The position numbers and the translations under genes were made by a program. Source: Guillardia theta CCMP2712 (taxonomy: Eukaryota > Protista > Cryptophyta). From it: 52,316 bases of DNA. The notes under the pieces are model-generated. The model had not been told where the DNA came from and made no database searches. It worked only from the letters and a program-made list of their open reading frames with translations. The stretch is taken from assembly GCF_000315625.1 (NCBI RefSeq), contig NW_005434434.1, forward strand, positions 1-52,316, in the 5' to 3' direction. Shown here one piece after another: positions 40,655 through 47,386 of the stretch (position 1 is the stretch's first letter; every line of letters starts with the position of its first letter).

Positions 40655-43600
40655 TCACTCATTCAACAGCTTGATCTCAGCTCGCACTCTCTTCGCCTGC
40701 AGGAGCGTCAGGCCCAACCCTCCGTCTGTTTCCCGTCGGCAGAAATCTTCGTCAGTGAGCAGCAACAAAGTCTTTCCATCGACGCTGTTTGCTTCAACTG
40801 CTGCTGCCGCATCTCGAAGCCCGCACTGCAGAAACAGAGCGGCGACGTCCTTCACGCTCAGAGCATATGCTCCTTGCCCTGTATCTTCGACGCTGCCCCC
40901 CATAGCAAGTGTAAACGCAGAGGACAGCTCTTGCCGAAACTCTGCCGAATCCCTGTGCCTCCTCCTCGAGTCCTTCTGCGTCGCTCTCCTCAAGACGCGC
41001 TGCAGCCGGGGAGGAACAGAAACGAAGTAGGGAATCGTCTCCTCCTTCACTCTGCCGATCAGAGCCTTCTTCTCCTCTACTGACTTATCCAACGACCCCA
41101 GCTCGTCTCCAGCTGGGCGCGATGATCCCTGTGGATCCTGAAGGAGAAACGGAACGTATCCCAGAAGCAGCTCGTAACCGATCAAGCCCATCGCCCAGAC
41201 GTCACTCTGCACATCCCCGATGCCTGAGGTCCCGAGCAGCTGCTCAGGGCTCATGTAGAGCAACGCCGATGCTGGTTTAACCTCCAGCGCTCCTTGCGAC
41301 ATGTCCGGGCTTTCCTCGAACGGGCATCCGAAGTTCACCAAAGTCACGAGCTCGGTGGTGTCCTGCAGGATGACGTTGACGGTGTTGATGTTGCGATGTG
41401 CGAGGCCGAGGTCGTGTAGACAAGTGACGGCGTCGGAGAGCTGAAGCAAGACGTGCTGGCACTTGGACACGGAGCTCTGATCTTGCGCTGATCTTCGCGC
41501 TATCCACTGATCGAGGGAAATCCCCTCCACGAGCGTCATGATGACTATGAGATAGCCCTCAGCAAGCTCCCAACCTAAGAAGGGAGCCAAACTTGCATGT
41601 CGAACAGATGTCAACTTGTCAAGGACAGGTTGCACTTGCCCTCTGACTCGTTCTGATATACACTTGTAAAACTTGAGAGCACAACTGCTGTTAGCCCCCT
41701 CCTTCGTCGCAATGTACACTGATCCTCCTTGTCGTGCGCGAGCCTTTCTAAGGATGCTGAACTTGCCGTGCTCTTTGAGGTCACAGAGCCTAGGGACTTC
41801 GATGGGAGGGTCTGTTGGGCTGCAGGTCCCATGGCCTCCTAGCGCGAGCTCGCGCGATGCTGTTGGCTGGATCTCCCGCAGCCTCTGCATTTCGAGCGCG
41901 AGCTCCTTCAACGAGAGCCGAAAGGTATCGAGAGACTGAGACAGATGCTGCGAGTCGCTACTCCCCTCCTTTCGCTCGTTGTAGATAGAGGAGATGCGGT
42001 TCCTCAGGCTCGTTCCCTCCGACGACAGCAAACTACCGATCAAGCTCTCCAAAGCGTCCTTGGCCTCCGTCCACTTCGATCGGAATTCGTCGTGATCCAT
42101 GGAGAGGTCCTTGAAGCTAGCGGAATGAACAAACTCGTCCCTCTGATCTCTCAGTGACTCCACTGCTCGTTCCAAGCTCGACGAGTCCATGTAGCCAGGA
42201 TTGTTCACCAGAAGAGCTGAGAGCAGCGTGATGTCCCAGCTATCCATTTCGTCTTCCTTCAGCCGCTCAAGCATGGCTTTGCCCAATCTACTTCGCTGGT
42301 AGTCATTCATCCGAGAGGCTATCTCTCGCCCCGTCCTGTGGTTCCAGTTCTTGCCTGTTCTCGACTTGTAACACTTTCTCAGCACCTTCACCAAGACTTC
42401 AGTTCCCAGGCCCAGCATCAGTTTCATGTAGCGGCTGAAGTTGTCCTGCGGCGTGAAGGCTTCTACAAGAACCGGCGGGTCGGGATCATTCTTCCAGTCT
42501 ATCACCGCACCTCCTTTCGTTTCGTTCTTGAGCGAGCAGCCTTCGATGATGCAAGAGGAGGGGACAACGATCTCGAGCCCCTTCCCCTCGGCCACGATCG
42601 GTCTGAAGCACTTCTCGATCGTGCAGGTGTCCAAGCGGATTTTTTGTGCATTGAAAGGTTGATTCCAAAAGACGCGAACAGCTGATTCCTTGCAGTCTTT
42701 GATGGTTGTCTCAGATACCTTGAAGGTTGCCCCAGAAGCATGGATACCAACGTTGCAGCCTGAAATGTTCAAGTTCATAAAGTTTGCCTTACACTGATCA
42801 TTGGCCGCAACACCGATCATTGCACATTTTTCTATCGTTGAATTCTTCACGATAATTTCCTCAGCGCATGAACTTAAGACGATACCATGCCTCCCACAAG
42901 GTCCAACCCTGCAGCCGTCTACTTGAAGCCCATGGCAACCAGTATCGTTGATGCAGACTGCGGAGCCGTTGGGGCATCTGACTTCTACGTTCTTCATTGT
43001 CAAAGAACCTGACGCCAGCAACACTCCACAACAGCCACCCGAGGTAAACGGGGAGTTCTTACTCAGAGATGAAAGAGCCATGATGGAGAGAGAGTCAAGA
43101 ACAACTCCAGGAGCAGAGATTCTCAGGGCAGCAGACCCGACAGATACCAACTTGGGTATTCCCAAGGTAGCACGCGCTCCCACAATACTGCAAGGCTTTG
43201 TGATCTCTAGAGTAGCAAGAAAGTATTGAGACAACTCAGAGTTCTGGATGATGACAGTGTCGTGGGCTTGCAGCATCTCCAGCGCTAGAGACAAGGTAGG
43301 AAACTCTACCTCAACTGAAGCTCCTGACTCTGAAGGTTTTACCTCCCCTGCCTTGGCATAATGCAGCACATCTGACCCTTCGAACAGGACCGGAACTCCT
43401 CGAGGACCTTCCTTTCCCACCTTCTTTCCTGCCCTCCACTCGCCTGTCACCGTGTCTAGCACATCAATGCCTGCAGTTTGAAGAAGGCAAGCTGATAGGG
43501 CGGGACGAGGAGGGCAGGGCTTGCAGTCGAAGGCGACCATGGCGCCATGACTGGAGGTGATGGTAGCAAAGGGAAACGACATGTCAGGATCTAGATCCAT

Positions 43601-46600: not shown

Positions 46601-47386
46601 ATATGAACGAGGTAGTAGCAACGTTTACCTAGATTCAACGCATGTAATCATCCCGGCTACTGCTGCATGATTCTTCGAAAGAACCTTCAAAAGGAGGAAT
46701 ATCAAACATTTTTCATGCTGACGTACAGAGCTCAATTACCTTTGCGATGACTTCTGAATTGGTTTTACCGAAATAGTAAAGCATCTGCAACTGGTCGTCA
46801 GAAGTTGTTGGTCGGCGAACTCTCACGAGGTATCGATGTCACTTACAATACTATCGACCATATGCTTGCTTCGAAACTTCTGGCCTCCAGGAGAAAACTG
46901 CATGCAAACCCTTAAGGGTTGTTGTGCGTGCCGAAAAGGTACCTCAACAACTCCCTTTACGACATCGCTTGCACTTGGGTGTACCGTCACTGCATGATAC
47001 TGTGTTCTCCCGAACACATTTCGAACTTCATCAATCGCATTGAGAAAAAACAAGAAGGATATCTCTTGTTGATTGCAGTGGTCAGAAGCGATCAGCAGTG
47101 TGCTAGAAACTCTCTTCATGTCATACATGAGTTGAACGTCCTTCGTCCAAGGATCAAGGGACATACAACTGCAAAGTCCTTCTATCGCAGGTAGAGCAAC
47201 GTAGCCGTTCCATTGCCTTGTGCTCACAGGTAGACCTGCACCACTCTTCCTCGAGGAAAGACTGACGGTGAGGACTATACACGGAGAAATGTGGTCTCCT
47301 CCATCAAGAATATCTGACAGACCCTCCATCTTCACCTGGATTTGTGAACAAGAGCCGGCTAAGCGTGTTCTTCTTCCGAAGTTCAT
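40655..47386 (-). CDS. Giant multidomain protein: ART-like?, Ser/Thr repeats, FG repeats + GLEBS-like motif, SPRY, right-handed beta-helix, HEPN (DZIP3-like), pseudokinase, SAM
   Basis: 1988-aa ORF plus upstream small exons (start ATG at 47329 or 47386). Motifs: SITHMAVYSGSSFEELRVGDY; YFEV..IAVGV..SIGFHSHDG..GDRIGCGI..YFVRNG; WDITLLSALL..LRDQRDEFVHS; ALKFY, HRNINTVN, NFG, YMSPEQ, DVWAMG; SVKDVAALF..VDGKTLLLLT. Confidence 0.88.
44370..45017 (-). repeat. Coding FG-type repeats (SSAL(S/P)GFGQT)n with a higher-order ~213-nt duplication
   Basis: 30-nt unit, visible directly. Confidence 0.95.
45297..45918 (-). repeat. Coding 30-nt tandem repeat (SELSQSTSTA)n, ~21 copies
   Basis: Unit CTGTACTTGTAGACTGCGATAGCTCACTAG, near-perfect. 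Confidence 0.97.

What the first reader, a model, noticed from the sequence alone, without database searches (positions are those of the whole stretch)
40655..47386. Giant candidate innate-immune sensor-effector protein (FG/GLEBS-SPRY-beta-helix-HEPN-pseudokinase-SAM)
Seen: one continuous ORF strings together nucleoporin-like FG repeats, a GLEBS-like motif, SPRY (~43530-43960), a beta-helix (~42500-43300), HEPN (~41990-42430), a kinase fold (~40930-41770) and SAM (~40660-40865). Established: SPRY domains are ligand sensors in TRIM proteins, HEPN domains are dimerisation-activated RNases in defence systems, and SAM domains oligomerise. Inference: a single-chain antiviral or cell-death switch in an alga. 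I do not recognise this architecture from any described protein.
Basis: partly seen in the sequence, partly recalled or inferred. Interest (0 to 1): 0.88.

Follow-up and report, generated by a model that had tools for sequence, protein, structure and literature searches.

The report
Nup98-like HEPN–pseudokinase–SAM giant protein
A cryptophyte alga (Guillardia theta) encodes a real, transcribed protein of about 1,970 residues that joins a copy of its own nuclear-pore Nup98 docking segment to a ligand-binding module, a predicted RNA-cutting HEPN domain, a dead kinase and a SAM domain of the kind that self-assembles; I found no description of this combination, and its biological purpose (RNA surveillance or defence) is still open.

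Summary
The minus-strand ORF 40655-46621 (1988 codons) carries S/T-rich and decapeptide repeats, 19 uncharged FG repeats, a GLEBS-like motif, SPRY, a small beta-barrel, a right-handed beta-helix, a DZIP3-like HEPN domain with Rx4H, a kinase fold with HRN and NFG, and a SAM domain.

Two corrections:
- The ORF stops at 46621. Three in-frame stops separate it from 46823-47386.
- RNA contigs splice out a 45-nt in-frame intron (45100-45144).

The genome is Guillardia theta CCMP2712. A transcriptome protein (99% identical) spans SPRY to SAM.

An old paralog (contig C12, 51% identity) keeps the whole architecture. The scan noted the same architecture on another piece of this genome (s1-431619).

The HEPN-kinase(-SAM) core forms a family of about 10 genes whose named relatives are all cryptophytes. 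Its N-termini vary: RRM, La plus CCCH, ARM, beta-helix. Most members keep an active kinase.

The GLEBS segment is 64% identical to the genome's own Nup98-like gene.

Best reading: a nuclear-pore or mRNA-export-tethered HEPN RNase or RNA-binding switch controlled by assembly. An immune role is possible but untested. The protein is not a member of the RNase L/Ire1 family. I rate it a new variant of a known kind.

The parts
40655..46621 (-). Whole open reading frame: 1988 codons plus stop. The first in-frame ATG is at 46507. The 5' end of the gene is unresolved.
46082..46384 (-). Ser/Thr-rich low-complexity stretch, residues about 80-180
45297..45920 (-). About 21 tandem copies of a 30-nt unit encoding a Ser/Thr-rich decapeptide
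   Evidence: 97% matches between copies; Pfam PF25296 Decapeptide, E 1e-16
45100..45144 (-). 45-nt in-frame intron (GTAAAT..CACAG on the minus strand). It is removed in RNA contigs and takes out 15 residues in the linker between the decapeptide repeats and the FG repeats.
   Evidence: joint 45099->45145 in 3 runs of 3 studies
44374..45016 (-). FG-repeat region: GFGQT-type units with 10-aa spacing, 17 FG dipeptides, 1% charged residues
44177..44344 (-). GLEBS-like segment, residues 760-815. It is a paralog of the GLEBS of the genome's Nup98-like ORF on contig C75.
   Evidence: Pfam PF21240 23.8-25.2 bits, below the cut-off of 27; 64% identity over 56 aa, E 3e-25; aligns to human Nup98 GLEBS chains 3mmy and 4owr
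43517..43996 (-). SPRY domain, residues about 876-1035
   Evidence: PDB 2yyo SPRYD3, E 4e-14; Pfam SPRY 20.4 bits, below the cut-off of 26.3
43331..43489 (-). Small beta-barrel (SH3-like in shape) between SPRY and the beta-helix.
   Evidence: AF2 model m8a98200402a5, strands at model residues 11-62; a Hanusia homolog gives a weak Mind-bomb SH3 hit
42488..43318 (-). Right-handed parallel beta-helix, NosD/pectin-lyase-like
   Evidence: Pfam PF13229 49.6 bits; AF2 pLDDT 88.7; Foldseek hits to polysaccharide lyases and tailspikes, E 4e-5; Atlas TM 0.65-0.70
41897..42454 (-). HEPN domain, DZIP3-like. The Rx4H motif (RDEFVH) lies at 42125-42142.
40952..41767 (-). Protein-kinase fold, predicted catalytically dead: HRN at 41390-41398, NFG at 41327-41335, degenerate Gly-rich loop. 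The VAIK-type Lys is kept.
40658..40885 (-). C-terminal SAM domain
   Evidence: profile A2 against PDB: SAMD1 1.7e-6, SARM1 2.3e-6, L3MBTL3 and polyhomeotic SAM domains; a paralog passes Pfam SAM_2
40613..40654 (-). Short 3' UTR. RNA contigs of three runs end sharply at 40613.
46823..47401 (-). It is in the same frame but cut off by three stops, and there is no evidence that it is coding or spliced in.

Best explanation
Shown:
- This is one transcribed gene of Guillardia theta. Its product is modular.
- The N-terminal half is disordered: S/T repeats, then uncharged FG repeats with a GLEBS motif. The FG/GLEBS segment is copied from the cell's own Nup98-like nucleoporin.
- The structured half runs SPRY, small beta-barrel, beta-helix, DZIP3-like HEPN (Rx4H kept), kinase fold lacking both catalytic aspartates, SAM.
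- The HEPN-kinase(-SAM) core is a family whose named members are all cryptophytes. Its N-terminal modules are swapped and include RRM, La and CCCH RNA-binding domains.

Inferred mechanism:
- The FG/GLEBS segment places the protein in the FG phase of the nuclear pore, or on Rae1/Gle2-bound export mRNPs.
- SPRY plus the beta-helix binds a still unknown ligand.
- The HEPN domain binds RNA and probably cleaves it.
- HEPN output is gated by self-assembly through the SAM domain and the dead kinase, which acts as a scaffold. In logic, not descent, this resembles RNase L and Ire1.
- Whether the target is faulty host mRNA (surveillance) or foreign RNA (defence) is not decided by the data.
For: Gene reality:
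- ORF of 1988 codons.
- A G. theta transcriptome protein of 1091 aa is 99% identical from SPRY to the stop.
- Contigs of three runs cover 40613-45440, end sharply 42 nt past the stop, and carry a minus-strand GT..AG splice.
- The C12 paralog is colinear over 1277 aa at 51% identity.
- Window versus C6 paralog gives dN/dS 0.39.
- A Hanusia phi fragment keeps the GLEBS-SPRY junction.

Domains:
-.

HEPN motif:
- His is invariant and Arg is conserved in at least 90% of 27 family members.

RNA link:
- Paralog with RRM-HEPN-kinase-SAM.
- Homolog with CCCH-SPRY-beta-helix-La-HEPN.

Pore link:
- GLEBS is 64% identical to the genome's FG-rich Nup98-like ORF.
- The FG repeats are uncharged.

Pseudokinase:
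- HRN and NFG here; HRN and DIG in C12.
- Other paralogs keep HRD and DFG.

SAM:
- Closest solved SAM domains are SAMD1, SARM1 and polyhomeotic. From my own knowledge these are self-assembling SAM domains.
Against: - No RNase, binding or localisation data exist.
- The HEPN Pfam score is below the cut-off (20.7 against 27).
- This genomic copy has Asp after the catalytic Arg (RD), where 25 of 27 relatives, the C474 copy and the transcript have Asn. Activity of this copy could be reduced.
- DZIP3 itself is, from my own knowledge, known as an RNA-binding protein rather than a proven RNase.
- The HEPN homodimer prediction gave no verdict.
- GLEBS motifs can bind Bub3 instead of Rae1 (from my own knowledge).
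- Rae1 binding was not tested.
- The N-terminus and start codon are unresolved.
Confidence: 0.45

Rival explanations
1. Innate-immune or cell-death switch. SPRY and the beta-helix, or the Nup98-like decoy, sense a viral ligand. SAM-driven assembly then activates the HEPN RNase to shut down translation or kill the cell.
For: - The HEPN fold is closest to DZIP3-like HEPN clusters of molluscs and arthropods that are fused to NACHT, COR/Roc and TRADD-like domains.
- Anantharaman et al. 2013 (PMC3710099) list this HEPN family with CARD, NACHT, DEATH and LRR fusions and lineage-specific expansions in animals.
- SARM1 SAM is among the best SAM matches.
- The locus was duplicated recently, with repeat-number variation between copies.
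- The PDB entries that align to the GLEBS segment include 4owr and 7vpg/7vph. From my own knowledge these are Rae1-Nup98 complexes bound by viral proteins.
Against: - There are only about 10 loci in the genome.
- dN/dS is 0.24-0.47 in every domain between the recent duplicates.
- Named relatives come from five cryptophyte genera, and most keep an active kinase.
- No NACHT, TIR or Death domain is present.
- No infection data exist.
- PADLOC gives only generic kinase matches.
Confidence: 0.2
2. Non-catalytic scaffold. The HEPN domain only binds RNA or protein, the kinase is dead, and the protein serves as an FG/SAM-driven condensate or pore-associated adaptor with no nuclease output.
For: - The window copy has RD instead of RN in the HEPN motif.
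- Both catalytic Asp residues of the kinase are lost and the Gly loop is degenerate.
- The FG repeats are cohesive in type (uncharged), and the closest solved SAM domains are of kinds I know to self-assemble.
- The C6 paralog has lost kinase and SAM yet remains under purifying selection and appears in RNA contigs.
Against: - The Arg and His of the Rx4H motif are conserved across all 27 family members, including this one. That is what selection for catalysis would give.
- The sister copy and the transcript carry the canonical RN..H.
Confidence: 0.25
3. Annotation artefact. The long ORF is several adjacent genes or a low-complexity read-through. The public annotation places only a 198-aa model on the 3' end.
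For: - The public gene model on this contig covers only the last 198 residues (P0006).
- The model on the sister contig C474 is partial and differs internally.
- The repeat-rich N-terminal half could stay open by chance.
Against: - 1988 codons run without a stop.
- The transcriptome protein spans SPRY to SAM.
- RNA contigs bridge the FG repeats and the decapeptide repeats with an in-frame splice.
- The C12 paralog keeps the same order in a single 2179-codon frame at 51% identity.
- Hanusia keeps the GLEBS-SPRY junction.
Confidence: 0.04

Closest known systems
RNase L / Ire1 (kinase or pseudokinase fused to a KEN-type HEPN RNase)
   Same: A protein-kinase fold sits next to a HEPN domain with an Rx4H motif. 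An N-terminal sensor region is present, and regulation by self-association is expected. In RNase L the kinase is also catalytically dead (from my own knowledge).
   Different: - The order is reversed: HEPN lies N-terminal to the kinase.
- The HEPN is DZIP3-like, not KEN. No PF06479 hit appears, even at E up to 10.
- The best kinase matches are generic (MELK, StkP, PERK, CaMK).
- SAM, SPRY, beta-helix and FG/GLEBS are extra.
- Most family members keep an active kinase.
DZIP3/hRUL138-like HEPN proteins of animals (PF18738)
   Same: Closest HEPN fold: TM 0.80-0.83 over 176 of 186 residues. 12 of 27 family members give weak PF18738 hits. The WD..LL and R(N)xxxH signatures are shared.
   Different: All scores are below Pfam's cut-off. 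The animal proteins carry RING/TPR, NACHT, Death, CARD or COR. The listed fusions include no protein kinase, SAM or FG/GLEBS (PMC3710099).
Nup98 (FG nucleoporin with a GLEBS motif)
   Same: Uncharged FG repeats flank a GLEBS motif. The motif is 64% identical to that of the genome's own FG-rich Nup98-like ORF and aligns to human Nup98 GLEBS.
   Different: There is no autoproteolytic Nucleoporin2 domain. The C-terminal 1100 residues are unrelated to nucleoporins. The FG units are GFGQ, not GLFG.
Swt1 (nuclear-pore-associated endoribonuclease with PIN and HEPN domains)
   Same: A HEPN domain in a protein expected at the pore. The Swt1 HEPN is a structural match, Z 6.7. Swt1's role in mRNP surveillance is cited in PMC3710099.
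   Different: There is no PIN domain, the HEPN family differs, and pore association here is only inferred from the FG/GLEBS segment.
SARM1 and polyhomeotic/SAMD1-type SAM proteins
   Same: The C-terminal SAM profile matches these SAM domains best, E about 2e-6.
   Different: There is no TIR or chromatin domain. Oligomerisation was not tested.
Bub1/BubR1 (GLEBS motif plus kinase or pseudokinase)
   Same: A GLEBS-type motif and a kinase or pseudokinase occur in one chain (from my own knowledge of these proteins).
   Different: The GLEBS here is of the Nup98 type and is embedded in FG repeats. There is no TPR or KEN box, and the kinase is not Bub1-like. Not tested further.

Membership tests
HEPN superfamily | All-alpha helical-bundle fold | tested here: met
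   AF2 model at pLDDT 89.4 is all helical. The best PDB match is Csm6 HEPN, Z 9.1. Swt1 HEPN gives Z 6.7 and sacsin HEPN Z 6.6. For helical bundles a Z below 13 is not decisive alone, but Atlas TM 0.80-0.83 to HEPN_DZIP3 clusters supports the call.
HEPN superfamily | Conserved Rx4-6H motif | tested here: met
   RDEFVH at residues 1494-1499. His is invariant and Arg is at least 90% conserved in 27 relatives. The polar residue after Arg is Asp here and Asn in most others.
DZIP3/hRUL138-like HEPN (PF18738) | Score at or above Pfam's gathering cut-off of 27 bits | tested here: not met
   20.0-20.7 bits. 12 of 27 relatives hit weakly, best E 7e-5. The domain is structurally closest to this family. 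It is a distant relative, not a certified member.
RNase L / Ire1 | KEN-type RNase domain (PF06479) C-terminal to the kinase | tested here: not met
   No PF06479 hit at E up to 10. The HEPN lies N-terminal to the kinase.
RNase L / Ire1 | Ankyrin-repeat 2-5A sensor, or lumenal sensor with a transmembrane segment | tested here: not met
   No ankyrin or Ire1 lumenal-domain Pfam hits.
Active eukaryotic protein kinase | HRD catalytic Asp, DFG Asp, Gly-rich loop, VAIK Lys | tested here: not met
   HRN at residue 1742 and NFG at 1763. The Gly loop is degenerate and the Lys is kept. By sequence this is a pseudokinase. Paralogs C22, C93 and C89 keep HRD and DFG.
Nup98 | FG repeats with an embedded GLEBS motif | tested here: inconclusive
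   FG repeats are present. GLEBS scores 23.8-25.2 bits against a cut-off of 27 and covers only profile positions 19-39. It is 64% identical to the C75 ORF's GLEBS, which scores 30.3 bits in the genome search.
Nup98 | C-terminal autoproteolytic Nucleoporin2 domain (PF04096) | tested here: not met
   No hit in the protein. The genome-wide search also found none, but its controls did not ring either, so that search is uninformative.
SAM domain | Sequence or profile similarity to solved SAM domains | tested here: met
   Profile of 10 relatives against PDB: SAMD1 1.7e-6, SARM1 2.3e-6. The single sequence scores only 13 bits in Pfam. The paralog on C75 passes SAM_2 at 28 bits.
SPRY domain | Sequence similarity to solved SPRY domains | tested here: met
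   SPRYD3 (2yyo), E 4e-14 over 144 residues. Pfam gives 20.4 bits, below the cut-off of 26.3.
TRIM proteins | RING, B-box and coiled-coil N-terminal to SPRY | tested here: not met
   No such Pfam hits.
Right-handed parallel beta-helix (PF13229) | Pfam score above the cut-off, and the fold itself | tested here: met
   49.6 bits against a cut-off of 25.9. AF2 model and Foldseek/Atlas matches agree.

The most novel reading that the evidence does not exclude
An integrated-decoy sensor. The cell has copied the Rae1-docking FG/GLEBS segment of its own Nup98, a site that (from my own knowledge) several viruses attack to block mRNA export. It has wired that copy to a HEPN RNase, pseudokinase and SAM assembly module. 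Interference with Nup98-Rae1 would then be read out as RNA cleavage or cell shutdown. This would be a guard/decoy immune logic in a unicellular alga.
Probability: 0.1. Interest if true: 0.9.

Novelty: new variant of a known kind. Interest (0 to 1): 0.6.

Why it matters
Pairing a HEPN RNase with a kinase fold is known from RNase L and Ire1, two central stress and antiviral switches. Here the same two folds appear to have been joined independently, in the opposite order and with a different HEPN family.

The family's named members are all cryptophytes, and it swaps its N-terminal targeting modules. One branch has captured the cell's own Nup98 FG/GLEBS segment.

If the inferred mechanism holds, three things follow:
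- It would be a second, convergent example of kinase-fold-gated HEPN nucleases.
- It would be a natural case of a nucleoporin-derived targeting or decoy module.
- It would offer an entry point to RNA surveillance or immunity in cryptophytes, a lineage for which my searches found no described system of this kind.

It also corrects the public annotation, which models only the last 198 residues on this contig.

Tried and rejected
- **HEPN homodimer prediction:** no verdict, score 0.03. This is not evidence either way.
- **Foldseek of the HEPN model against PDB:** nothing at E <= 0.001.
- **HEPN profile A1 against PDB sequences:** no hits.
- **Genome search for the Nup98 autoproteolytic domain PF04096:** no hits, but the controls did not ring either, so the search is uninformative.
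- **Upstream ORF 46826-47386:** no Pfam family and no homolog of 105-336 aa. I rejected it as demonstrated coding sequence. A GTAAGT at about 46847 could be a splice donor, but that was not tested.
- **First read-laying request:** I laid the part beside it, as the tool advised, so 45441-47900 (the 5' end) has no read evidence.
- **Raw RNA-seq run X18:** only 3 reads laid. It says nothing about expression.
- **"RNA?" runs:** these are guesses by the tool. I accept them as RNA only because of the minus-strand GT..AG joint and the sharp end at 40613.
- **Word-based homolog search on the HEPN region:** returned only near-identical fragments.
- **Protein Atlas feature search:** only generic kinases and beta-helices.
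- **PADLOC:** only generic Ser/Thr-kinase matches and one marginal LmuB hit.
- **Caspase-domain ORF downstream of the C6 paralog:** I considered it as a swapped effector. I rejected a fusion because homologs place their own N-terminal exon just upstream of it.
- **C474:** I treated it as a gap-ridden second copy or haplotig (1003 Ns), not as an independent paralog.
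Full report
**What is in the sequence**

The minus strand carries an uninterrupted frame of 1988 codons from 46621 down to the stop at 40655-40657. The 192-codon ORF at 46823-47401 is in the same frame but is separated from the main ORF by three stops. It matches no Pfam family and has no homolog in the protein collection. The first ATG inside the long frame is at 46507. The true 5' end is unresolved.

**Organism and transcript**

- Near-identical database proteins are named Guillardia theta CCMP2712 (GUITHDRAFT_122848). 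The assembly has 87.1 Mb in 669 contigs.
- The public gene model on this 52,316-bp contig covers only the last 198 residues (P0006).
- A transcriptome-derived G. theta protein (UniRef A0A7S4K095, 1091 aa) is 99% identical from inside the SPRY domain to the stop codon.
- Contigs of three sequencing runs from three studies cover 40613-45440 and end sharply at 40613, which is 42 nt past the stop.
- The same contigs carry a joint that skips 45100-45144. Its ends read CT..AC on the plus strand, which is GT..AG on the minus strand.
- The skipped piece is 45 nt (GTAAAT..CACAG) and in frame. It removes 15 linker residues.
- The tool only guesses that these runs are RNA. The strand-specific splice and the sharp 3' end are what make me accept them.

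**Domains, N to C**

1. Ser/Thr-rich low complexity, then about 21 copies of a decapeptide.
2. An FG region with 17 GFGQ-type FG dipeptides and 1% charged residues.
3. A GLEBS-like motif.
   - It scores below Pfam's cut-off: 23.8-25.2 bits against 27.
   - It aligns with human Nup98 GLEBS chains.
   - It is 64% identical over 56 residues (E 3e-25) to the GLEBS of an FG-rich, Nup98-like ORF on contig C75 of the same genome.
   - The N-terminal module is therefore a duplicated piece of the cell's own nucleoporin.
4. SPRY (SPRYD3, E 4e-14).
5. A small beta-barrel followed by a right-handed beta-helix.
   - Pfam gives 49.6 bits.
   - The AF2 model has pLDDT 88.7.
   - Matches are to polysaccharide lyases, tailspikes and NosD-like proteins.
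6. A HEPN domain.
   - The single sequence only grazes PF18738, at 20.7 bits.
   - A 27-member alignment shows invariant Trp-Asp and His and a near-invariant Arg in an R(N)xxxH motif.
   - The AF2 model (pLDDT 89.4) superposes at TM 0.80-0.83 on DZIP3-like HEPN clusters.
   - Its best solved match is Csm6 HEPN (Z 9.1), followed by the Swt1 and sacsin HEPN domains.
7. A protein-kinase fold (E 6e-20) with HRN for HRD, NFG for DFG and a degenerate glycine loop.
8. A SAM domain. The single sequence is weak, but the family profile is clear: SAMD1 1.7e-6 and SARM1 2.3e-6.

**Family context**

The HEPN region has 10-11 loci in the genome. Their architectures are:

| Contig | Architecture |
|---|---|
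| C12 | FG-GLEBS-SPRY-beta-helix-HEPN-pseudokinase-SAM |
| C22 | beta-helix-HEPN-kinase-SAM |
| C33 | ARM-HEPN-kinase |
| C93, C89 | HEPN-kinase |
| C75 (second locus) | RRM-HEPN-kinase-SAM |
| C71 | HEPN-kinase-EF-hand |

- C12 is colinear with the window protein over 1277 residues at 51% identity and has a canonical RN..H motif.
- Outside the genome, named relatives come only from cryptophytes: Hanusia, Geminigera, Rhodomonas and Hemiselmis.
- Unnamed metagenomic relatives include CCCH-SPRY-beta-helix-La-HEPN.
- The constant core is therefore HEPN plus a Ser/Thr kinase, usually with SAM. The variable N-termini are often RNA-binding.
- Most members keep HRD and DFG. The FG/GLEBS branch in G. 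theta has lost them. The closest Hanusia fragment still has them.

**Copies of this gene**

- Contig C474 (6.6 kb, 1003 Ns) is a 98-99.9% identical second copy or haplotig with a different repeat number.
- C474 and the transcript carry Asn after the HEPN arginine. The window copy has Asp.
- Contig C6 holds a 93% identical paralog that ends after the HEPN domain in a KEREEQQ repeat. RNA contigs show that tail as loose ends at 41950.
- dN/dS between the window copy and C6 is 0.39 overall and 0.24-0.47 per domain. That is purifying selection, not diversifying selection.

**Interpretation**

The architecture is real, old (two paralogs at 51% identity) and constrained. Three observations favour an RNA-directed function of the core:
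- The HEPN catalytic pair is conserved across the family.
- The same core is repeatedly fused to RRM, La and CCCH domains.
- The HEPN model matches solved HEPN domains from nucleases (Csm6, Swt1).

The Nup98-derived FG/GLEBS segment most simply acts as an address for the pore's FG phase or for Rae1/Gle2. The dead kinase and the SAM domain are most simply assembly and gating elements. In logic this is like RNase L and Ire1.

In descent it is not. The order is reversed, the HEPN is not KEN-type, and the kinase resembles generic CaMK- and StkP-type kinases.

An immune role is compatible with three things: the animal relatives of this HEPN family (PMC3710099), the SARM1-like SAM, and the fact that Nup98-Rae1 is a viral target. 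Nothing here tests that role. The small family size and the purifying selection do not point to an arms race.

**Novelty**

Three full-text searches (HEPN with DZIP3 and kinase; HEPN with Guillardia; DZIP3-like HEPN) returned no paper describing this family. The 2013 HEPN survey lists kinase fusions only for KEN, with the kinase at the N-terminal side, and lists no kinase fusion for the DZIP3 family. I rate this a new variant of a known kind. The building blocks and the kinase-plus-HEPN logic are known. The order, the HEPN family, the SAM and the nucleoporin-derived module are new.

The scan's own notes flagged the same architecture on another piece of this genome (s1-431619). This is probably the C12 paralog that I found independently.

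Noticed in passing
window 45100-45144: A 45-nt in-frame GT..AG intron lies inside the long ORF. The frame reads through it, so ORF-based models would add 15 residues that the mRNA lacks.
   Followed up: yes
L021 (contig C474, whole 6658 bp): A near-identical (98-99.9%) inverted copy of window 42074-47938. It contains 1003 Ns and has a different repeat number. It carries Asn1495 (RNEFVH), as the transcript does. It is probably a haplotig or an unresolved duplicate.
   Followed up: partly
L009:3421-7287 (contig C6): A 93% identical paralog that is truncated after the HEPN domain and ends in KEREEQQ repeats. It has no kinase or SAM within 2.7 kb downstream. Its divergent tail appears as loose ends in RNA contigs, so it is probably expressed.
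   Followed up: partly
L009:8399-9610 (contig C6): A Peptidase_C14 (caspase-like) ORF lies 1.1 kb downstream of the truncated paralog on the same strand. Homologs indicate that it has its own N-terminal exon, so it is a neighbour and not a fusion. A homolog in Baffinella frigidus (as named by its source) carries NB-ARC.
   Followed up: partly
L023:3687-6503 (contig C75, about 189.7-192.5 kb): An FG-rich 939-codon frame with a GLEBS motif (30.3 bits in the genome search; 25.0 in hmmscan of the translated ORF; cut-off 27). It is the likely Nup98 homolog of G. theta and the source of the window's FG/GLEBS segment. No autoproteolytic domain was found in this frame.
   Followed up: partly
L024:3870-6929 (contig C75, about 392 kb) and L025:3414-6113 (contig C71): Family members with RRM-HEPN-kinase-SAM and HEPN-kinase-EF-hand architectures.
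   Followed up: partly
window 40510-40642 and 47570-47692: Tandem repeats flank the gene: a 33-nt unit in 4 copies just 3' of the stop, overlapping the mapped RNA end, and a 50-nt unit in 2.5 copies upstream.
   Followed up: no
window 37310-38299, 32397-34374, 50357-51526: The neighbouring frames encode ordinary eukaryotic proteins: a TCP-1/CCT chaperonin fragment, Hsp70-like fragments and a SET domain. This genome has introns, so these are exons. None is linked in function to the finding.
   Followed up: partly
window 4001-6000: A sharp drop in G+C to 0.33, against about 0.52 elsewhere in the window.
   Followed up: no
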